DNA of 63,594 bases, the filler included, from Ministeria vibrans ATCC 50519 (taxonomy: Eukaryota; Protista; Filasterea), in NCBI GenBank assembly GCA_943704425.1. It is 8 parts of 8 records of this genome, joined end to end, with 100 filler letters (N's around TTAATTAATTAA, not from the genome) between each part and the next. Parts side by side here need not be neighbours in the genome. Positions count along the whole stretch, not along the records: positions 46,073 to 57,629 come from CALSCP010002807.1; 7 more parts are not named here. The stretch is one strand, 5' to 3'. The notes below the pieces were generated by a model. That model was not told where the DNA came from, made no database searches, and saw only the letters and a program-made list of their open reading frames with translations. A program made the translations under genes and the position numbers. Positions 46,073-57,815 of this stretch are shown here, in pieces. Each line of letters starts with the position of its first letter. The stretch's first letter is position 1.

Positions 46073-46103
<31 letters not shown>

Positions 46104-46420
46104 AAATCTTCTCTTGAGACTGATATGGCGAGCAGAGCGTCCACTCTGGCGTCTTCTACTTGGTCTTCTTCAAGTGGACTCCCCATTCCCAGCTTGCGCC
46201 TTGCGTTCTGTGGTCTTGCGACGTGTCACCGCAAAACCGACTTCGGTCACTCTCCTGATCGGCTCAGCGCCCTCGCTCCCCGCCCACACGCCCCACTCCT
46301 GGCGTGCACAGCCCCCTCCTGCCTACACCACGTTGGTCAAACGTCTCGCTGTCTCGGAAACACACACACACACTCTCTCTCTCTCACGTCTGATCGTATT
46401 GTTGTTCATCTCTTGTGTAG

Positions 46421-46843
46421 CTTGATATCAACCATGACAAGTCTGTCATCACTGTCGTCGGCATTGACGCCGGCTCAAAGACTCCTCGCGGCACACAAAT
46501 TCCAAAGCCACATGAGGCGGCACCACGGCGAATGACCTCCTCATCGGACAGACCCGACTCGTCCATGGAATCCGAACAGCTTTTCCGCGAGACCAAACGG
46601 AGCCATCGCGACGACGGTAACCAAAGAAAGCGCCCTCATATTTCACATAAAAACACGCTCTGATTCACGCTCACACATATACGTAGACGAAGATGAGCCC
46701 ATGTACCTGGACATTGACGAAATGAATGCCGGCGCCGGCAAGGAGCCCAGTCGCAACCGCCACAGCGGCATCTACGACAAAATGGGCAACGAAATCCCCG
46801 GTCCCATGCCTTTTGATCGTGACTACACAGGTAAATATATTAA

Positions 46844-46931
<88 letters not shown>

Positions 46932-48648
46932 TTAATAATAATAATAATTATTGTATTATATTACATGACTGTTTTGTTCATTTCTCGAAACTTTGACGAA
47001 ATAATGATAATCGTAAATAATTGATTATTAATAATACTTGTTATTATTACATTTTTCTTGTTTTGTGTTAGGGGAAGATGGGCCGAGTGCCAATGTGTCG
47101 CGCGCGACTACGCTTGAGAGCACGTCGACTGCAGCGGGTGCGGGAAAACTTCCTGTGTACAAATTGTTTGGGGCGACGGAAGACCAGTCGTCGGTCAACT
47201 CGATGTCGCTCAATATGATGGAGATGGAGGAAATGAACAACCGTCGCCCTGCTCAACGGCCGCTACAAGGCCAGACGAGCGTGATGTCGGGCGCTTCTTC
47301 GCAATTGACTGTCAACTCGCTGCGCAGTCAGAGTGGCGCATCACTCCTGTCACGTCCTATCGAGGACTGGAGCGACGACGGCGAGGGTGAGCTCGAGCAT
47401 CGGCCCTGGTTCATTGCCATTGTGACTGTCGTCCAGATCATCCTTATCATCATTATCTTCTTCAAGGGCTTCCAGCCCGTTGCCTTTTCTGAATCCGCCA
47501 CATCCGTCGCCTTCAACTTTGATGGTACCTCTTTCAATGCCACCTACGAGCGCGAGACCAACATTTGGATTGGGGCGCGCCAACGTGACCTCATTGCTCT
47601 TGGTGCCTACTTTACGCCGTGCATGGCAACCGATCCAGACATAGAGCTAAAAGTTGACGAGCAAAATGCTATTGCTGCAAATCAAACGTGCTGCTTGCGC
47701 CAGACAACGTCCCCGTCCGGCAACGGCACGGGCCTTGTCAGTCAGTGTGGCGTTCTCGACGTACCATCTTGTCTCGCTGCGCCCGGTGGAGTTGTCCTGT
47801 CGCAAAAAAGCGACTGTGGTACCACTGCCTGCGTTGACGTAGTCATGCGGCCATGTTGCTACGGTAACCTGGGCCAGTGCGAAGTGCTTACACAGAGTCG
47901 CTGTGTCACTTTGGAGGGTGTGTACCACGACCGTGCCGATGTCTTCTCGTGCGCCGACGTCGACTGTCTTTCGCAAACGTGTGCCCTCGGCCGCACACGC
48001 AGCAATCCCGTCTCGCAGTGGTGGCGCGTTTTTACCGCACCCTGGCTCCACGTCGGCATTATCCATCTTGTTGTCGTGGGCGTCTTGCAACTCTACTTTG
48101 GCTGGTTCGTCGAGGGCACCGGCGGTTTCTGGTTCACCATGGGCCTCTACCTTACGTCGTCCTTTGCCGCCTTCACCATTGCCGGTCTTTTTATGCCCTA
48201 CGCTGTCCTCGTTGGCGGTGGCCCGGCCGTCTTTGCTCTCGTGGGTGCGCGTCTTGTTCAGCTTTTTGCCGCTCAGGACCAGCGTCACTCCGTGTGCGAC
48301 GTGCTCCTCGTTCCGTTACTCCCACTTATTTTCATTGGACTCACTCTGCTCCCTTACGTCTACATGTTTGAGTGTCTCTTTGGCCTTGTCATTGGCATGT
48401 GCTTTGCCGTTGTGTTTCATCCTCACGTGGCCATGCGACGCGCCGATAGCCCCCTCTTTCGCTGCGTCACCTTGCTTGTCCTGCTTGTGTGGCTTGCCGC
48501 CATGGTCGGCCCTTACGTCGTCATGTACCTCAATGTGGTGATTCCGCGCGGCTGGTGCGGCTCAGTATGTGACTCTGTTGCCTGTGTCAATGTCATCGAT
48601 GCCGCCATGTGTTACTTTGTCGATGCCTCCACTCTCCCTTGGTTGTAA
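46421..48648 (+). CDS. RHBDF: Inactive rhomboid (iRhom, RHBDF-like); 5' end uncertain
   Basis: Exons 46421-46616, 46687-46830 and 47072-48648. Motifs HRPWF, N.WIG....LI.LGA.F.PCM, the Cys-rich iRhom homology domain (CC...RPCC.G..G.CE......C....G.YH...C..V.C....C), QWWR.F....LH.G..H. The catalytic Ser and His positions are replaced. Confidence 0.9.
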
Positions 48649-49143
48649 TGATTGTATTATTATATTCTTGGTATATTTTTCCCGTGTACCTCCGTAAAAA
48701 TATATATAAAACATTTTAATCATTCTTTTTCGCTTACAATCATTCAAAAGTACAAAAGAATCATAATAATAACGTCATTAATTTACTACTAATAATAATA
48801 ATAATTATTAATGTTATCATAATAATAATTAATATTATCATAATAATAACAATTAATATTATCATAATAATAAAATAATAATATTATTATTATTATAATT
48901 ATTTGACTCTTGATTTTCTATAATATTTTATTATTCTTACATTTTTGTTTTATTAATTGTGGCCGATTTTTTATGTTTTACGTCTTTTGAATTGAAAAAG
49001 TGGCGCAATATATCGTTCGTTAAAACTTCATTAATATAATTATTTTTATTGATTTCTTTTGTGAAAAACAATTGAGAAGTAAAAAAAATGTTTGTTTTTC
49101 GTTTGTTTTTTTCCGCACATGAATTAAGTACTGCTCAGGAGTT

Positions 49144-52100
49144 TCACACATTCACCCAGTCCTCTCCGGTAGTTTCTTCGAGATTCAATTGAATCGAACA
49201 CTCGTCAAATGTCCACGTCTCAGTGACGTTCTCGTAAAAGTCTGCGGGCACACGCACAAACCCGGCAATGTCGAAGATGCGCAAAATGGCGGCGTCGCGC
49301 AGGACGTCGCGTAGCTCGCGCGATTGGTGCGAGCCGTCAAAGAACTTGTTGCTGCGTTGCTTGAACGACGCCTGGAAGTCGGCCCAGGAAAAGGCCAGCA
49401 CACAGTCAAAGCGAAGAACACGCTCGAGAACATCGCTCGAAATCACAGTGGTGAGAGTGGGCCGAGGCAAGCGCCAACGCTCCGTCTCGCCGTACACTCG
49501 ATTTGTGTCCCGTGTCGCCACCAACGAACTGCGCAGGTCTTGAGCCAGTGACGCTAGTGTCACCGCGTGGACCTCAGTATTCACCAGTTCCTTCTCGGGC
49601 GCATCCACGGGCACGAGCTCCCCCGTCTCGTTGAGATACGTTTTGACGTCACGGTAGCCCACACTTCCCCCACACAAAAAGCGCTTCATGATCTCTTCCA
49701 CATTTATGATGCTATGGAGACTCTCGCTGTCGATGTGCGGCAGCGCCATCATTGCATACTTGCACTACGGAAATAAAAATAATTAGTACAAGAAAAATAT
49801 TATAATAATAATAATAATAATAATTGATAAAGACGTCAAAAACATAATAATAATTTCATAATAATAGTAATTATTATTATTATTATTATAAAGGCATGCG
49901 TACGCGAGAGAATCCACCGGAGAGTGCCAATGGGAGACGCATTAGTTGTTGCAAAATGAGCTGCATCGACGTGTGTTCTTCGTAGGCCTTGTTCGAGCCG
50001 TGGCGGAACGGCGTAAGATGCTCGGCAATAAAGCGACCTTTGATGTCATTGACGAGCGCCGCAATGTGCAGCTGTAACTTCACGACCGTACGCTCTTCAT
50101 CGCTCGTAATGGGCACGTTGACATACTTGTCGATGTTGTTCAGCACATGCGTGACTGTCCAGCCTTGCAGGTACACCACTTGTCCGTCTGGACAGCGTCC
50201 CTCCAGAGCTCCCGTCAGCTATATGAAAAACAAAATCAGTCACTATTAATGATTCTCTATTATTTTATTTTTAATTTCATTGCAAAAAGACAATAATAAT
50301 AATAAAAATTAATTATTAATGACCATAATAATGTTGTTGTGCCGTTGTTGTTGTTGTGCTCACCTGATAAACAAAATCGAGAGCTTGAGCGCGCTGTGCC
50401 TCGTCCGTGTCTGGATCATTGATGGTCTCCCAGGGGGCGCTTTGGCGTAGCATATAGATGTAGCGCTTCATGAGATTGAGTTGGTCGTGCGGATTTTGGT
50501 AGCCCATTGTTGCTGTTTTGGCAATGTTCTGCAAGTCCTGGCGCAAGTTGCTGTCTGGCGGCAAAAGGGAGGCCATCTGCTCGTGAAGCGCATGCACTTG
50601 TTGTGCCAGCATAATTGCCCGAAAGCCGTCTACATGGTCTCCAGTGGCAGACGCAAACATCGCGCTCTGTAGTTGAAAAATATTAGTATTATTATTATTG
50701 CTATTATTATAATTATTTTACCGCATCGTTGATTTCCGTCAGATCCTCTTCCCGGAGCTCGCTGTTAAACAACCCAATGTATGGATCCGCATAGGTAATG
50801 CGGGCGTAGTCGAGCACGGGCTGGTCGGTGAGAGACGCCGTCTGCTCAATCGCACGTTCGACGAGCGCAGCCGCGCGCCTGTCCAACTGGATGAGATCAA
50901 TTGTGGGCGAGTCGCTACCCCCACACAAATAAGTCCACCGACCAACCAATAAATTTAAAATCATGTTCATATGGTCGGTGGCAAGCCACGTCTCGTTGAG
51001 CCGCGACTCGGCGAGGTTGCGCACAAGTTGCTGGCGGAATTCCATGGCGCGCTCGTTCCCAACATGCTGTCGATTCACAATGGCGTGATTCCACGACTCC
51101 ACCGACGCAATCACATGGTATCCAAGACGAGCAAACGAACCAAAGTCCGGCGACAGGTTTTTGAGTAGACCTCGTGCCTCACGGTCGAGCGTTCGACGCA
51201 CCTGTTCCACGCGAGGCCACCAGTTGATGGCTCGCGGTCTCGAAGGTCCAGCGCCATCCCTCGCGCTCTCCGACTCCTGGAAATTTGCCTCCGCACTTGC
51301 TTGTGCTTCGAGGAGCAGACGACGTGCCGAGCGTGCGTGCATCAAAATGTTCACATCGTCATCGGTGTGATTCACTTCGTTCATGAGATGAAATGCATGG
51401 ACAGCGATGAGGGCGGCCCAGGCAAAGCGCGTGTCCTCCTCCACGTCGAGTGCTGCACTAGATGGACGAGCTGTGTTGGTCGCGGCCGGCAGTGCGTGTG
51501 ACAGCAAGTCGAGCACGGCGTCACGATGATCATGTTCGCCGAGCTCGAGGTCGTTCATAAAGTGTCCTTGAATTTTGGTGGCCATCGAGAGGACCTCGAT
51601 CTGTACTTTTGGTGTGCGCTGACCAGGCTCAAGCAGTGCAAACACTTTGGTGGCGTGATCCTTGGCGGTGGCCCACGCTTTCGTGGGATTGACTCCTGCA
51701 TCGATGTGCGCGGTGAGCTCCTCCATGAGATCATCGAGAGTGGCCGTGTACGATACTGCTGGGGCAGTGGCATCGGTCTCATCGGCATCAACGTTCACGC
51801 TGAGTGTCGTTGGCACATTGGCAACCAGCGTGCACAAGAGCCCGTGGATCATGTCGACGGGCGCCTCTTCGAATTTGTCCAAGGCAAAGTCGTGAAGTTC
51901 GTCCATCAGCGGTGACATCAGCTGAACAAGTGCAGTGGCAATGGCACGTCGTTGCTTCACCGACGGTACCGGTGTGGGCGAGGACGTAGATGTCGACGAG
52001 ACAAAAAACCTGTTGAGGCGCACTGCAACAAATTGGACAAGCAATGCTGAGGGTACGGAGTTTGTGGTGGGCGAGGGTGTCTGTGCTGCAGGTGCGGGGC

Positions 52101-53946
52101 CGCCGGTGTTCGACTTGGTGCTGCTTTCCGCCGCGCTGTTCGCCTGCTCCACCGCCTCCACCGCTGAAAGATTCTTCGAGGTCGTCTCATCAGACGACGA
52201 ATCGTGATGTGTGATCGAAGGGCGGTAGTGTGCGCGCAAAGTCGAGACCAGCTCGCCCAGCGGTGAGTCGGGCGAGTCAACAAGACCCGCCATCACAAAG
52301 TTGCAGTTGACAGTGCGTGCGAGCTTCACCGTCGCGTGGTAGGTCAGGTACGTAAGCACCGCGTGCTTGACTTGGGATTGGTAAAAGTGTGACATGGAGT
52401 GCACGGCAAGCTCAAGGGCCGGATGCGCCAGCAAATGAGAGGGTGCAGCTGCCTTGGATACCGTCTCGATGAGTTTGACGCGATCACGTGCCTCCTTAAC
52501 CATCTTCTTGGTTTCCGCATGAAGCGGCGAGACAGACTCCGAGCTGGCGCTTGACTGACCGTCGGAGTTTTGACTGCGACGAGTCGGCACCGATGTTAGG
52601 TCCGGCTCGCCATCGGGCACTTCACGACGCAATTGCTCCTCGAGCGTCTTCAGACGCTCGGTGCCGGTGCTCACCACACGTCCGTACCAGTGCGATGCAC
52701 GCTTCCATGCCTCACGACGGCTGTCAATGCACTGATGAAAGTCGCTCACGCCAATGCCATTGAAGAGGCGCGTCGCCAGCTCGAACATGCTGTCCAAGTG
52801 CATCCCCTCGGCGGCCAGCTCGAGCTTCTCATTCACGAGGTGCGTCGCAACCAGACGCTGTTCCCACTCCTGAGCGTACCACGCATGTCGATTGTTCAAC
52901 AACGTAGCATGCGCGTGTGCTGCAATAGGCGAGTAGGGCGCTTGCTCGAGGTACTCAATGGCCTGGCGGTTCGCTGAGGTCTGCATGACGACGTCGGACA
53001 CGTCGACGCCTTGGCCACGGACGTACATAAAGGCAATGCTCTGGCTGGCAACCGCTGCCATGTCAGAACGATCCGTGAGGTGAAACATGGCGCTGGCCGC
53101 CTCCAAACGCACAGCGGCCGTAGCAAAGCGCAGAAAGCGGGCGGCGATTGTCTCAGTCGAGGTCAGCGACGCGCGCATCATCTGTCGGCCTTCGGACAGG
53201 CAGCTGGCCGCAAATCGAAGGAGCGCCTGCTGTCGATCCGTCCTTCCCGGCGGCAAGGCATTGCTGTTGCTCAGCTCGGTGAAGAGATCGTCGTAGAGGT
53301 CGTTCTCGGCACGATCGAGTTTTGCGCGCCAGGTCACATCATTGACGCCGCTGTCGAAGACGCCGTTCTCGCCGGTGTCGCCGCCGTCGCCGCCGTCGTC
53401 CGAGTCCGAGTCCGAGTCTGGGAAGGGGTCAATGTAGCTAATGGCGTCCAGGTCACGGTCGGGCTCGGCAGCGGCCGCCGCCACGATGACGTCGCGGTAC
53501 GAGCGCGCCAATTCCGTGTCGACTTCGAGGGCGTCTGCATTGCCAATCATTTCGATGTAGAGCATCGCCTCGCACTCGTTCGCTCGGCGTTGCTGTGGCG
53601 AAGCACCCTCGACAAGAAGCACGTTGGAAAGGTGAAGCTGTGCGAGACCGCGCATCGCATCGATGCAATTGTGATTTTCCGCAAGAAGTTCAAGAAAAAG
53701 ATCTCGCGCTTTTCGGTAGTCTTTCTGCTCAATGGCCGCACGCGCCGCAGCGAGCTTGGGCGGCTCCGACGGGTGTCGATCATCCGTTGCAATGGGTGCT
53801 GAGGATGGCGTTGAAACCGACGAGCCTTGGCGTTCTGGCTGGGGTTGAGCGACAGTCGAGGTCGACGGTTGGGACGAAGTCGACGTCGAATTTAGCGAGG
53901 AAGCGCGTGACGGCGTCGAGGAGGGCTTTGAACCGCTGGAACCCAT
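49144..53946 (-). CDS. 1487-aa protein: N-myristoylation motif, TPR/Sel1-like repeats, helical middle, putative NEL-like (CxD) E3 ligase domain
   Basis: Exons 50722-53946, 50364-50666, 49904-50218 and 49144-49764, all phase 0 with GT-AG and AT-rich introns, join into one open frame. MGSSGSK; KDYRKARDLF...AMRGLAQL (TPR); FMYVRGQGV and LAAEGMHLDSMFELA..LFNGIGV...A.HWY (Sel1); EGRCPDG. Confidence 0.8.
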
Positions 53947-54820
53947 GGCGAAGGCGGTGTACTATCAATGACAGTGGGTTTAAAGAGAAGGGCGTGTATA
54001 GGAGGAGGGTGAGAAGGGAAATGAGGAGGGGAGAAAAAGAAAAAAAATTAATAACAAACAAAACTCAGCTTTTTTATTTTTATTATTCGTCCAAAAATCG
54101 AATGATTAAAAATGTCTCGTGAACGTTGGCACCCAGCTCTCCTGTCCCGTTTTGGGCTTCGGTAGTGAGTTCGGCTTTTGAGTTTTGACTTTCGAGGGCC
54201 CTGCGGGCTCCGGCGCATTGAGTTCGCATTGAGCCTGAGGGGCGTCGCAATGAAGTCGCAATGGCGCACTGGGGGGTCACTGGGGACTGCCGTGTACCCC
54301 TCAGGGGTCTATCAGTGCCTCCGTTCATTCTTCTCATGGGTGTATCCAGTATCAGTGGGTCTATGGGCTTCTTTGGGGATATTTTCGTCTTGAATTGATT
54401 AGTCTAAGGCGGAAGTATTGTGTCGATCTTGTTGTACTACAGCTCTCGATTCTCTATTAATTGTTATTTTCTTCGTATTTCTGTGTATTACTCCGTAGTG
54501 TCATGATCACTCTAGTCTTGACTCTTGAGTGCATGCATTCAGTATTAATTGTTGCAACAGCTTCGCATGGGTTGCTTAAAATATGATAACATTGTATATA
54601 ATTATGAATCATTGTTTCATCATTGTCACTTCGTTCGGGCAAAATATGACAAACTTCTAGAGACAAACTGATTACATCCATGAATAAGGAGGTGGAGTTA
54701 GCAAGTTGTTGATTGAAAACAAACAGGGTTATATCAAATAGAAAAAGAAAAAGTATATAAAGAAAAAGTTTTACATTAATTGTATTATTCAATATTATTT
54801 TTGTGGGTGGTTAGTGTGGT

Positions 54821-57514
54821 TCAGTCGCGTGGAGGCAGGTGATAAAACTTGCAGGTGGACGCAGCGGGACAACGAGTAAGTACCACGCTGCGACAAACAC
54901 CGGGGTAGGAGCAGTCGGGACAGTCTCGAATGCGATGCGATGTCTTTCCACAAAAGGCACAGGCGGCGAGGTTGCGCGCTGGGGGGGCGGCACCTGAAGA
55001 GGGAGCCGTGGTCGCCGGGGGAGGGCCACTGGTCGTAGCAGTCACTCGGGGATTGGAAGTACCATTACTGCGCGCAAACGCCGAGAGTCCACCACCGCCA
55101 CCAAAACGAGGCGCTACACTCGAGCTGCCCGCCAACAAGTTTGATATTTTGAACGTGCTAGTTGTGCCGAAGGCGTTGCTGTTTGTGCTGCCGGTGGTGG
55201 CAGCGGAAGCCGCCAGCGACGACAGGTTGGAGAGGTTGAGAGTGGACGAGGAAGAGGTGCTGGTGGACGGAGTGGAGGATGCTGAGAGTTGGTTGAGTGA
55301 GGGAGGAGGATACTTGGAGGGCGGTGGAGGGGCGTAGGGGTGACGTGCGGGAGGACGCTCTGCAGGGGGAAGCTGCTGGGGTGGATGTGAGTGGTAGTAA
55401 TGTTGTTGTTCCGGCTGCTGTTGGTGGTGTTGGTGGTTGTGCTGATGATGCCCAGTGTAGTAAGACGACCGTGGCGGCTGAGTGTGGTTGTGGTACTGTT
55501 GTTGTTGTTGTTGCTGTTGTTGTTGATGCGGTTCTTGTTTTTGTTGAGGGCGGTAATGGTCGGGCGGAGGTGGATGTGACAAGTGATGCGGCTGATGTGG
55601 CTGGTGTGGCTGGTGGGACTGTTGCAACTGGTCGTGGTGCAGAGGTGCGTCGGGCGGGGGAGGGAAGTGAGGATGAGCTGTATGGTGAACCGAGGGGCTC
55701 TCAAGCTCATACCAGAGAATCGTTTCGGCATGCTTGTGTAATTTTTCGGCGTGAGGATGTCGCATTTCGGCGAAGGGCGGTTCAATGGGTTCGGTGGAGA
55801 GGCGGTCGGCGAGCACAGAGCGCACGCGCTGCGCCTGCACCTCTGCCTCGACACTCGCCATCACCACTGGCCTATTATCCGTGTCCACTAGGGGCGGCAC
55901 GTCTAAGGTTTGAGGGCGCACCCACGGCACAGCAGCTTGCAGTCGCTCGGTAGTGCGTCGGAGCGCGGCTCCCTCGCGCACACTCTCGTTCTCTCGGCCG
56001 TTGCCGTTCGAAAGGGGTCGCGACGGCTTTGAATCATCCACATTAATCCAACGCGAAACAATTTCCACTTTGACCAATCTTGTGGCGGGTGCAAATGTAA
56101 CACGACGTCGCCGCTTTGCCGCCGTCGACGCGGAGCTGCTATCGGCAGAAGAAGAGAGAAGCGTGGGAGATGAGCGCCGGGGCGCATGCGCGTCCACCGA
56201 GGTAAACGACGACGACAACGACGACGACGACGACGATGATAAGGGAGCGATGGTCCTCGATGTTTTTGTAGAGATTGCAGCATCGGGGATGGGTGAGATA
56301 GTGCGAGGGCGTTTGCGCTGCGCCACGTCTCGGCCAGCGTTCGCAAGGAAGAGATTGTTGTCATCAGCATCGCTAGTGTTGATATTGTCGCCAATATCCG
56401 TAGACAGGGCGGTCGGCACACCACCGCGTGTGTTGTTGGTCTCAACGTCCACGTCCATGGAGGCGCGGTCGGCAACGGAGGCAAGTGCCCGAAACGCTTC
56501 GGGACCACTCATGGACGTGGTCTCGTCCAGCTCGGCCTCCTCGGCCGTACGCTTCAATGACTCTGCAATGCTTTCTACAGCGCAACCATCGTGCAACTGG
56601 GGCGTTCCCGGTCGCTGTTCGGCCGTCTCTTTTGCTCGCTCGAGTTCGCTCTCGTCCGTCGCCGCCACCAACTTCTTCCAGCGATCTTGCAAATCTGACG
56701 CTGTCAACGCCAACGATCGACCCATCGAGTCCGACCGCGCATTGCCTCGTTTCACTACACTTCGTACAGCCTTGATCACATCCTTCTGAGCCAGCATGTC
56801 CGCTACCGTCATCGGCAGTGCTCCCAATATCTATTAGGAAAAGAACCAACAGCAATAATTTCGTTAATGCGACGTCGCACAATCCACACACGCACACACA
56901 CACACAAGGGTAAAGAAAAGCAGGACAGAACTGGGGAGAGGCGTGCGCTGGGAGGGGTGGGGGGCGAGGGATGGGATGGGATGTTGACAGGTGCCATCCA
57001 ATCAAGTGGAGTATATCACGGTTTAACGGCCCTTGAACACCACTTCAATCATGGCAGGCAATGTGCAACCCACAGGAATACATCGTGTTCAGAGAATGAA
57101 GAGTTATAAGCTCGTTCTCCGCCTTTGTGTTTTCCTTTTTTTTTTTTTTTTTTTTTTTTTTTTCTTTGGTTCGTTCAACCAACAGAAACCGAACTCCTCC
57201 TTTCTGCGTCCGAGTCAGTTCACGAGCAACGATACGAGTACCCATGCGTTCGGCAAGGCACGTGGCGAACCGACTCTTTGTCTTGATGAAAACTGTTCTT
57301 TTTCTTCAACAGAAACTCTCTCTCAGACACACACACACACACACCGCCAGTCGGGGGAAACGTGTTCCGCACAGACTGACACGGTGCCGCAGCGCACGTG
57401 GAAGAGTGCACAACATCGATTGTCTTAACCTTAAGGCACTTTTGTGCGATCGCATCACTTCGCGCTCCTTTCAGCCACGACGCGACGACCAGCCCTGCGC
57501 CGCAATCTACAAGT
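54821..57514 (-). CDS. PPP1R10: PP1 nuclear targeting subunit PNUTS-like (5'-partial)
   Basis: Exon 57430-57514 spliced to 54821-56830 gives a TFIIS-N-like domain (LVDCGAG..V.SWL...LKILGALPMTV...ASDLQDRWKKLV). RVxF motif RRRRVTF, then VPWVRP, S.E..VQAQR...L and EP.EPP; C-terminal CCHC and CCCH fingers. Confidence 0.82.
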
Positions 57515-57815
57515 CTGCACAACACAATTACACACCACACACGCCGGCCGTCAGTAACGTCCGCATGTCATATTTCTATAAACAAAAGAAGCAAACGAGC
57601 GCCTCCTCTACATAGAAGATGCCTCGAAGNNNNNNNNNNNNNNNNNNNNNNNNNNNNNNNNNNNNNNNNNNNNTTAATTAATTAANNNNNNNNNNNNNNN
57701 NNNNNNNNNNNNNNNNNNNNNNNNNNNNNCAAGTGAGAGAAACAAGTGAGAGAAAGCGAAGGAAAACGAACACAATGATCAGAGAAATGACATTGCGCTT
57801 TTGAAAACAACACAG

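What the first reader, a model, noticed from the sequence alone, without database searches (positions are those of the whole stretch)
49144..53946. Spliced eukaryotic gene for a myristoylated TPR/Sel1 protein with a bacterial-effector-type NEL-like E3 ligase domain
Seen in sequence: four phase-0 exons join into a 1487-aa frame. It starts MGSSGSK (G2/S6/K7 N-myristoylation consensus) and has TPR and Sel1-like repeats. Exon 3 holds ...LTGALEGRCPDGQVVYL... (CPD at 50186-50194), and about 75 aa later EEHTSMQ-LILQQLMRLPLALSGGFSRCKY. Established: NEL E3 ligases (Shigella IpaH, Salmonella SspH/SlrP) use a catalytic CxD and pair it with a repeat substrate-binding module; SspH2 is lipid-anchored by palmitoylation. 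From memory, IpaH has ...ATESCEDRVAL... followed by DEIEVY-LAFQTMLAEKLQLSTAVKEMRF. The downstream segment here aligns without gaps as L..Q..(L/M)...L.LS.....(C/M)(K/R)(Y/F). Inference: this is a host-encoded, intron-containing, membrane-anchored NEL-like ligase in which Sel1/TPR repeats take the place of the LRRs. It could be a domesticated gene from an intracellular bacterium or an unrecognised eukaryotic E3 class. The ORF track hides it because the domain is split across introns.
Basis: partly seen in the sequence, partly recalled or inferred. Interest (0 to 1): 0.85.

Follow-up and report, generated by a model that had tools for sequence, protein, structure and literature searches.

The report
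Eukaryotic gene with NEL-like ligase domain
A spliced, expressed gene of a marine microbial eukaryote encodes a large Sel1-repeat protein whose C-terminal domain has the fold and the conserved Cys-x-Asp motif of the bacterial "NEL" ubiquitin ligases. That enzyme class was so far reported only from bacteria, and this protein's only bacterial relatives are in amoeba endosymbionts.

Summary
This gives 1487 codons starting MGSSGSK.

The protein belongs to a rare family with no Pfam or NCBIfam model: 20 hits among 1.84 billion representative proteins. Members are about 1000-1200 aa and collinear with the window protein. They occur in eukaryotic transcriptomes (EukProt) and, among 185,579 prokaryote species, in only two Paracaedibacteraceae genomes (amoeba endosymbionts).

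The family profile matches solved Sel1-repeat proteins (E 3e-19).

Sequence profiles do not detect NEL (Pfam: no hit; hhalign E 0.3). Even so, the top hhalign path aligns Cys to Cys and Asp to Asp.

Verdict: a very divergent NEL-like, probably transthiolating, E3 ligase encoded by a eukaryote. Activity, lipidation and the direction of gene transfer are untested.

The parts
49080..54038 (-). Transcribed region (mRNA) of the four-exon gene. The 3' end may reach about 49039.
   Evidence: The X7 contig of 4620 nt covers 49080-54038 without the three introns. An X16 contig reaches 49039.
50722..53946 (-). Exon 1 coding part, 1075 codons, starting at the ATG at 53946.
   Evidence: ORF list, sequence, junction 50722|50666 in the X7 contig. 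hhalign places residues 258-1072 on family profile positions 158-756 (probability 99.3, E 3.6e-20).
53926..53946 (-). MGSSGSK, an N-myristoylation consensus (Gly2, Ser6, Lys7), followed by about 55 residues rich in Ser, Thr and Pro.
   Evidence: Translation. No upstream ATG in the 5' UTR. The modification itself is inferred.
53602..53754 (-). Weak TPR-like pair (exon 1 residues 65-115).
   Evidence: Pfam TPR_16 E 0.015 and TPR_19 E 0.046, both below the curated cut-offs.
52657..53175 (-). Sel1-like repeat region (exon 1 residues about 258-430; for example SIAFMYVRGQGVDVSD).
   Evidence: It aligns to family profile positions 158-305. That part of the family profile matches solved Sel1-repeat proteins at E 3e-19 to 1e-12.
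50722..52656 (-). Middle region collinear with the family (motifs LSPDFGSFARLGYHV and ITYADPYIGLF near its end). The equivalent last ~160 residues in relative P0003 are modelled as helices.
   Evidence: hhalign, alignment A1, and residues 1-160 of the P0003 model.
50667..50721 (-). Intron 1: 55 nt, GT..AG, GC 0.15. It lies at the start of the NEL-like domain.
   Evidence: Skipped in the X7 contig.
50364..50666 (-). Exon 2, 101 codons: the first helices of the NEL-like domain.
   Evidence: The match to the family is weak but in the collinear position (profile 815-841, E 0.003).
50219..50363 (-). Intron 2: 145 nt, GT..AG, GC 0.23.
   Evidence: Skipped in contigs of X7, X16 and the polyA run X20.
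49904..50218 (-). Exon 3, 105 codons: the catalytic-loop region of the NEL-like domain.
   Evidence: hhalign to family profile 856-953, probability 99.1, E 4.7e-19, 37% identity.
50186..50194 (-). Cys-Pro-Asp (residues 1185-1187 by exon arithmetic) within LTGALEGRCPDGQ. This is the candidate catalytic CxD.
   Evidence: R, C, D, G and Q are invariant in 9 of 9 relatives. In the models the Cys sits in a loop at the N-terminal end of a helix. The top hhalign path pairs it with the Cys of NEL SCED.
49904..49981 (-). Motif EEHTSMQLILQQLMRLPLALSGGFSR, which continues as CKY at 49764-49756.
   Evidence: Family motif E-x-R-T-a-M..LL.QMLRLPL.L.GSY..VLYP. In the permissive hhalign path it aligns collinearly with NEL EIEVYLafQ.kLre.L.Ls...eMRF.
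49765..49903 (-). Intron 3: 139 nt, GT..AG, GC 0.16.
   Evidence: Skipped in contigs of X7 and X16.
49144..49764 (-). Exon 4: 206 codons plus the stop codon. It holds the C-terminal half of the NEL-like domain, including a beta-sheet insert and the family motifs NxFFD and RDAAILR..(E/D)(V/I).G(Y/F)..VP..FY.
   Evidence: phmmer found 20 relatives, the best non-self hit at E 5.6e-20. Alignment.

Best explanation
The gene encodes a 1487-residue cytosolic protein of a marine microbial eukaryote, built from three parts.

1. An N-terminal myristoylation signal followed by a disordered Ser/Thr/Pro-rich stretch. This probably tethers the protein to a membrane.
2. Sel1-like repeats and a long middle region that is helical where it could be modelled. 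These probably recruit substrates, the role that LRRs play in classical NEL effectors.
3. A C-terminal domain of about 410 residues (exons 2-4) with a very divergent NEL-type fold.

Proposed mechanism. The invariant cysteine of the loop G-x-x-G-R-C-P-D-G-Q (Cys1185) takes ubiquitin, or a ubiquitin-like protein, from a charged E2 as a thioester. It then passes it to a lysine of the recruited substrate. The neighbouring invariant aspartate (Asp1187) assists, as in IpaH, SspH and SlrP.

What is shown: the gene model and its spliced transcript form, family membership, motif conservation, Sel1 similarity at family level, and the NEL-like predicted fold of two relatives.

What is inferred: catalysis, the E2/ubiquitin substrate, lipidation and the substrate-binding role.

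The same family occurs in Paracaedibacteraceae endosymbionts with signal-peptide-like N-termini. There it is probably an exported, host-directed effector.
For: Gene model and splicing.

Family: exon 4 finds 20 relatives among 1.84 billion representative proteins. Exons 1, 3 and 4 align collinearly with relatives of about 1170 aa.

Conserved residues: R-C-x-D-G-Q, His, E-x-R-T and R-L-P are invariant in 9 relatives.

Sel1: the family profile matches solved Sel1 proteins at E 3e-19.

Fold: AF2 models have pLDDT 88.7 / pTM 0.88 (P0003) and 83.2 / 0.79 (P0006).
- The 532-residue model independently lists SlrP, SspH1 and IpaH1880 over residues 162-516.

Motif alignment: in the domain-trimmed hhalign the best local path is GTxGRCpDGQ against dATeSCEDRV.

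Bacterial context: the neighbourhood is effector-like, with an F-box protein and giant LRR proteins.

Defining NEL features (CXD nucleophile, unique helical fold) are taken from PMC9320238.
Against: - No sequence-profile similarity to NEL. Pfam PF14496 gives no hit on any exon or relative. The family profile against PDB sequences lists no NEL even at E<=10. hhalign of the family against a 20-member NEL alignment gives probability 0.2-0.3%.
- Foldseek finds nothing significant. SlrP and IpaH3 appear only at E 1.8 and 2.6.
- The models are of relatives that are 31-38% identical to the window exons, not of the window protein.
- The family has a beta-sheet insert and C-terminal motifs that were not aligned to the NEL profile.
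- The tools give no residue-level structural equivalence of the cysteines. Only the offsets are consistent.
- The window protein departs from two residues that are invariant in the nine aligned relatives (A2). It has His where they have the Arg of E-x-R-T, and Cys where they have the Val of VLYP.
Confidence: 0.6

Rival explanations
1. The domain is a true but remote relative of the NEL fold that uses its invariant Cys for a different reaction. Candidates are a deubiquitinase or other cysteine hydrolase, a deamidase, or a ligase for a ubiquitin-like or non-protein acceptor.
For: The family has an invariant His (H942 in P0004 numbering) and further invariant polar residues not seen in the NEL alignment. 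It also has a beta-sheet insert and extra C-terminal motifs. Divergence is so large that profiles fail.
Against: The Cys-x-Asp spacing and its position in the fold match the NEL catalytic loop. No solved hydrolase fold appears among the structural hits.
Confidence: 0.17
2. The resemblance to NEL is a coincidence of helical packing, and the CxD motif is unrelated. The C-terminal domain would then be a new fold or enzyme of unknown chemistry.
Against: Five different NEL structures are the top five, well separated from the next row (9.1 against 5.2). Each covers about 80-85% of the NEL domain. They are ranks 1 and 2 of 48,161 chains in an unbiased search. The best profile path pairs the two invariant cysteines and aspartates and stays collinear.
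Confidence: 0.18
3. The protein is a non-catalytic scaffold, and the conserved Cys is structural.
For: No activity data exist. Large helical repeat proteins often act as scaffolds.
Against: The motif R-C-x-D-G-Q lies in a loop at a helix N-terminus and is invariant across relatives as low as 29% identical to each other (A2). That pattern is typical of active sites.
Confidence: 0.05

Closest known systems
NEL (novel E3 ligase) effectors: Salmonella SspH2 (3g06), SspH1 (9h6w), SlrP (4puf); Shigella IpaH3 (3cvr, 3ckd), IpaH1880 (5kh1); Pfam PF14496
   Same: - C-terminal, mostly helical catalytic domain of similar size.
- An invariant Cys-x-Asp in a loop at the equivalent position.
- A collinear second motif (L..Q..L...L.L.S....RF/KY).
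- An N-terminal repeat module in front of the catalytic domain.
- Lipid anchoring is proposed here, and SspH2 is palmitoylated (established knowledge).
   Different: - No detectable sequence-profile similarity.
- Sel1-like repeats plus a middle region of about 640 residues stand in place of LRRs.
- A beta-sheet insert and extra C-terminal motifs (NxFFD, RDAAILRxLEVxGY).
- The motif is R-C-x-D-G-Q rather than S-C-E-D-R.
- The gene is encoded in a eukaryotic nucleus with introns.
- The bacterial members sit in Holosporales-type endosymbionts and have signal-peptide-like N-termini, rather than being T3SS effectors of enteric or plant pathogens.
Sel1-like repeat proteins (for example 4bwr, 6ok3, 6deh, SEL1L, Hrd3)
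   Same: The N-terminal region of the family matches these at E 3e-19 to 1e-7. Window exon 1 aligns to that region.
   Different: Known Sel1 proteins are adaptors without a fused Cys-dependent catalytic domain of this type. In the window protein the repeats are too divergent for Pfam Sel1.
HECT-like bacterial ligases (SopA, NleL) and the SidC SNL ligases
   Same: Transthiolating E3 ligases with a catalytic Cys. They are used by bacteria that live inside eukaryotic cells.

Membership tests
NEL E3 ligases (Pfam PF14496; IpaH/SspH/SlrP) | Catalytic cysteine within a conserved CxD motif | tested here: met
   The window has C-P-D at 50194-50186. Cys and Asp are invariant in 9 of 9 aligned relatives, with x = Pro or Ala. 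The top hhalign path pairs them with C and D of NEL SCED. Catalytic use is not shown.
NEL E3 ligases (Pfam PF14496; IpaH/SspH/SlrP) | The unique, mostly alpha-helical NEL fold | tested here: met
NEL E3 ligases (Pfam PF14496; IpaH/SspH/SlrP) | Sequence match to the NEL profile | tested here: not met
   PF14496 gives no hit on exons or relatives. hhalign against IpaH2.5 and against a 20-sequence NEL alignment gives probability 0.2-0.3% and E 0.2-0.3. No NEL chain is found by profile against PDB sequences.
NEL E3 ligases (Pfam PF14496; IpaH/SspH/SlrP) | N-terminal LRR substrate-binding domain (the typical architecture) | tested here: not met
   No LRR is found. Sel1-like repeats stand in its place. 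In the bacterial loci a separate giant ORF follows the gene; it carries LRRs in two of the three genomes (L004; L006/L007) and was not scanned in L005.
NEL E3 ligases (Pfam PF14496; IpaH/SspH/SlrP) | Cys-dependent ubiquitin thioester and E3 activity with a host E2 | not testable with these tools
   This needs biochemistry.
NEL E3 ligases (Pfam PF14496; IpaH/SspH/SlrP) | [quoted passage not shown] | tested here: not met
   The window gene has three spliceosomal-type introns that are removed in RNA-type contigs. It lies between eukaryotic-looking genes.
Sel1-like repeat proteins | Match to Sel1 repeat profiles or structures | tested here: met
   The family profile matches solved Sel1 proteins at E 3e-19. 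Exon 1 residues 258-430 align to that part. The window protein alone gives no Pfam Sel1 hit, and relative P0004 is below threshold (E 6e-4).
TPR proteins | Match to TPR profiles above threshold | tested here: inconclusive
   TPR_16 scores E 0.015 and 16.2 bits against a cut-off of 32.7, on residues 65-115 only.
N-myristoylated proteins | M-G-x-x-x-S/T at the true N-terminus | tested here: met
   The N-terminus is MGSSGSK. This is the first ATG of the transcript contig, and the 5' UTR holds no ATG. The modification itself cannot be tested here.
Unnamed Sel1 + NEL-like family (protists and Paracaedibacteraceae; P0002-P0013, L004, L005) | Collinear full-length similarity, including the G-x-x-G-R-C-x-D-G-Q and LRLPL motifs | tested here: met
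   Exon 1: probability 99.3, E 3.6e-20. Exon 3: probability 99.1, E 4.7e-19. Exon 4: E 5.6e-20. Exon 2: weak but in the collinear place.

The most novel reading that the evidence does not exclude
This is the first NEL-class transthiolating ubiquitin ligase encoded, spliced and expressed by a eukaryote. It belongs to a previously unrecognised, very divergent NEL branch shared between protists and Holosporales-type endosymbionts. Either a bacterial effector ligase was domesticated as a membrane-anchored host enzyme, or the NEL fold has a eukaryotic history that bacteria borrowed.
Probability: 0.5. Interest if true: 0.9.

Novelty: new variant of a known kind. Interest (0 to 1): 0.8.

Why it matters
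Reviews up to October 2026 describe NEL ligases as found only in bacteria (PMC9320238), in proteobacterial pathogens and symbionts (PMC13720258). They are treated as the textbook case of bacteria inventing their own E3 fold.

- A nuclear, intron-bearing, expressed gene with this fold and motif would overturn the "bacteria only" view.
- It would add a fourth transthiolating E3 type (beside HECT, RBR and RCR) to the eukaryotic repertoire of at least some protists.
- It gives a concrete case for studying gene flow between protists and their endosymbionts.
- It defines a new family with no Pfam or NCBIfam model. That family extends the known sequence space of NEL domains and replaces LRRs with Sel1 repeats.
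- It marks candidate effectors in Paracaedibacter symbionts of amoebae.

Tried and rejected
Searches that gave nothing useful:
- The search for homologous proteins with exon 1, whole and residues 700-1075. No hit, probably because low-complexity words filled the candidate list. This says nothing about relatives.
- ESM Atlas with exon 4 and with P0006. No usable hit; all scores were 0.83 or lower.
- Pfam and NCBIfam on exons and relatives. No family covers the C-terminal domain.
- phmmer of exons 3 and 4 against PDB sequences. Nothing relevant.
- Foldseek against the PDB for both models. Nothing significant.
- pdb_via on the 532-residue model. Foldseek's list held no NEL chain, so the result is uninformative.
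- Metagenome contig scan with the motif pattern. No confirmed relative.
- Alignment A1 was too gappy for a locus scan.
- hhalign against NEL, three ways. Not significant; only the register of the top path is suggestive.

Readings considered and rejected:
- Bacterial contamination of the assembly. The gene has introns that are removed in RNA contigs and AT-rich intron and intergenic regions like its neighbours. Exon GC is 53-59%, against 38-44% in the bacterial loci.
- The 3' exons belonging to a separate gene. One contig spans all four exons.
- CxD as a chance motif. That holds for the motif alone (three copies), but not for its invariance across the family.

Direction of transfer: the tree is unrooted, the window sequence sits on a long branch, and support is weak. 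I make no claim.

Residue numbers above 1075 are exon arithmetic only.
Full report
**Observation**

The piece 46073-57629 holds, on the minus strand, an ORF of 1077 codons (53946-50713). Three shorter ORFs follow in compatible frames.

Reading the minus strand shows three short introns with GT..AG ends:
- intron 1, 50721-50667, 55 nt
- intron 2, 50363-50219, 145 nt
- intron 3, 49903-49765, 139 nt

Their GC content is 0.15-0.23, against 0.53-0.59 in the exons. The four exons hold 1075, 101, 105 and 206 codons, all in phase 0 and without stops.

Laying public contigs on the region settles the model.
- One 4620-nt contig of run X7 lies on 49080-49764, 49904-50218, 50364-50666 and 50722-54038. It is the spliced form, with exactly these junctions, across all four exons.
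- A contig of run X16 (same organism label as the probable source genome) confirms introns 2 and 3.
- A contig of a polyA RNA-Seq marine metatranscriptome (X20) confirms intron 2.

The 92 nt of 5' UTR in the transcript contig contain no ATG, and the start context is GCCATGG. MGSSGSK is therefore the N-terminus. The runs that hold the stretch are coded, so I do not name the organism. They include alga-culture, seawater and marine samples.

**The exons were not joined**

Residue numbers beyond 1075 are arithmetic only.

**What the window protein matches on its own**

Pfam finds no NEL and no Sel1 domain in any exon. It finds only a sub-threshold TPR (E 0.015, residues 65-115). phmmer of exons 3 and 4 against PDB sequences finds no NEL even at E<=10. 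CxD occurs three times in the protein against 0.8 expected. The motif by itself therefore means nothing.

**A family exists**

phmmer with exon 4 against 1.84 billion representative proteins gave 20 hits. Among them:
- Six are proteins of 1007-1212 aa with the matching part at their C-terminus.
- Several are fragments covering the whole C-terminal domain.

The window protein is collinear with these proteins along nearly its whole length:

| Window part | Family profile positions | Result |
|---|---|---|
| Exon 1, residues 258-1072 | 158-756 | probability 99.3, E 3.6e-20 |
| Exon 2 | 815-841 | weak, E 0.003 |
| Exon 3 | 856-953 | probability 99.1, E 4.7e-19, 37% identity |
| Exon 4 | C-terminal end | E 5.6e-20 to P0002 |

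In nine relatives the residues R-C-x-D-G-Q of G-[TMS]-x-[GT]-R-C-[PA]-D-G-Q are invariant. Also invariant are a His, E-x-R-T, R-L-P and a series of C-terminal positions. The window keeps both Cys and Asp.

No Pfam or NCBIfam model covers the C-terminal domain in any member. One relative (P0007) has an inserted SAP domain.

**Who has the family**

- Two relatives (P0002, P0003) come from EukProt transcriptome assemblies.
- Another, P0007, is on a 59% GC contig.
- A scan of one genome for each of 185,579 prokaryote species with the motif pattern found two genomes only. These are Candidatus Paracaedibacter symbiosus PRA9 (full length, 73% identical to P0004) and a Paracaedibacteraceae MAG. The pattern is strict, so more divergent members would be missed.
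- The bacterial-type members have signal-peptide-like N-termini (read by eye), and their loci have 38-44% GC.
- In all three bacterial genomes the gene is followed directly, on the same strand, by a giant ORF of 2475-2614 aa. This ORF carries LRRs where it was tested. In one locus an F-box protein and transposases lie nearby. This is the usual look of eukaryote-directed effector regions in amoeba symbionts (inference).
- In a tree of the C-terminal region the bacterial-type sequences form one clade (support 89/99). The eukaryote-type ones lie outside it and are more diverse. The tree is unrooted and the window sequence sits on a long branch, so the direction of transfer is open.

**Sel1**

The family profile matches solved Sel1-repeat proteins at E 3e-19 to 1e-7, over profile positions 172-326. 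Window exon 1 residues about 258-430 align to that part. The TPR reading is weak.

**The fold of the C-terminal domain**

Two AlphaFold2 models were made from alignments that held the window exons as separate rows:
- P0003, 532 aa: pLDDT 88.7, pTM 0.88
- P0006, 392 aa, essentially the domain alone: pLDDT 83.2, pTM 0.79

The domain is mostly helical with a small beta-sheet insert. The motif Cys sits in a loop at the N-terminal end of a helix.

Foldseek finds nothing significant in the PDB. For the domain-only model, SlrP and IpaH3 show up only at E 1.8 and 2.6.

VIA-align against 48,161 PDB representatives, which does not depend on Foldseek, gives for the domain-only model:

|---|---|---|---|---|
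| 1 | SlrP 4puf_B | 6.4 | 231 | model 14-373 vs chain 470-762 |
| 2 | SspH1 9h6w_A | 6.2 | 225 | model 11-372 vs chain 416-695 |
| 15 | IpaH3 C-terminal domain 3ckd_A | 5.3 | 218 of 262 | model 10-369 vs chain 293-565 |
| 32 | IpaH1880 5kh1_A | 4.7 | 191 | model 10-324 vs chain 301-575 |

The other rows are short helical bundles (56-124 residues aligned). Nearly all lie on the first ~140 residues. Only one, a 122-residue designed protein at rank 13, has a range that spans the whole domain.

A second look at Foldseek's list for the domain-only model gives:
- then SlrP 6.3, SspH1 6.2, IpaH3 6.1 and IpaH3 C-terminal domain 5.3
- the first unrelated row scores 5.2 with 103 residues aligned

The NEL fold therefore stands clearly above everything else and is covered almost completely. 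These are the conditions under which the tool advises trusting a middling Z. The distance of the Cys from the start of the alignment is also close. It is 87 residues in the model. It is 80 in SspH2, taking its catalytic Cys as Cys580 (from established knowledge, not a tool result).

**Sequence against NEL**

I fetched IpaH2.5 from pCP301 and 20 NEL proteins of 39-62% mutual identity. hhalign is not significant with the single sequence, with the full alignments or with domain-trimmed alignments (E 0.34).

Yet the top local path in the trimmed comparison is exactly LixGTxGRCpDGQ against AxdATeSCEDRV, with Cys on Cys and Asp on Asp. With a permissive threshold it stays collinear for 258 columns. 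It leaves the beta-sheet insert unaligned. This is consistent with very remote homology but proves nothing on its own.

**Interpretation**

By the definitions in the NEL literature, the defining features are a CXD nucleophile and a unique helical fold, and the class is said to be found only in bacteria (PMC9320238; PMC13720258). Measured against these:
- The protein meets the motif and fold criteria.
- It fails the sequence-profile and LRR criteria.
- It is not bacterial.

I therefore do not file it in Pfam NEL. I describe it as a new, very divergent NEL-like family.

The most likely mechanism is transthiolation. Ubiquitin would pass from a charged E2 to Cys1185 and then to a substrate held by the Sel1 and middle regions, on a membrane if Gly2 is myristoylated. 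I give this a confidence of 0.6.

The rivals are:
- the same fold with a different Cys chemistry (0.17)
- a coincidental fold resemblance (0.18)
- a non-catalytic scaffold (0.05)

**Novelty**

No paper found in the library describes this family or a eukaryotic NEL-type ligase. If activity is confirmed, this would be the first eukaryote-encoded NEL-class ligase. It would also be a new candidate effector family of Paracaedibacter-type endosymbionts.

Noticed in passing
window 47038-48648 (+): A 536-codon ORF with a Rhomboid domain (Pfam PF01694, E 7e-14, residues 326-461). It is convergent with the NEL-like gene. The two stop codons are about 500 nt apart, separated by a 23% GC spacer.
   Followed up: partly
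window 54821-56827 (-): A 668-codon ORF upstream on the same strand, rich in Ser, Pro, Gln and His (a run of 10 Gln and His/Gln-rich stretches). Its C-terminus is Cys-rich (CAFCGKTSHRIRDCPDC...CKFYH), reminiscent of a zinc knuckle or CCCH finger. No Pfam hit at E<=0.01.
   Followed up: partly
window 46573-47072 and 48573-49072: Sharp AT-rich islands (GC 0.33 and 0.23) lie between genes of 0.53-0.64 GC. One holds a long trinucleotide repeat read as a poly-Ile run in ORF 46701-47024. The introns have the same (ATT/ATA)n character.
   Followed up: no
L004 11558-18985; L005 4641-12485; L006 13856-21394; L007 4605-12143: In all three bacterial genomes the family gene is followed within about 50-330 nt, on the same strand, by a giant ORF of 2475-2614 aa. 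This ORF carries LRR_6 repeats in L004 and in L006/L007; the L005 ORF was not scanned. Classical NEL ligases carry their LRR in the same polypeptide, so this conserved pair may be a split version of that arrangement.
   Followed up: partly
L006 21470-22843 (-) and surroundings: An F-box protein (PF00646, PF12937), a TPR protein, a PemK toxin and several transposases lie next to the family gene in a 159-kb metagenomic contig. This is an effector-island-like context.
   Followed up: no
P0007 residues 309-340 (locus L003): A GC-rich (59%) relative carries a SAP domain (PF02037, E 8e-9) inserted in the middle region. The window protein and the bacterial members lack it.
   Followed up: no
L001 196-1464 (+): In a metagenomic contig a separate 422-aa Sel1-repeat protein is encoded about 1.2 kb upstream of family member P0004.
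   Followed up: no
window 53346-53400: Contigs of the marine polyA run X20 touch this Asp/Ser/Gly-rich coding stretch for only 18-27 nt and then run on unlike it. These look like low-complexity matches from other organisms rather than alternative isoforms.
   Followed up: no
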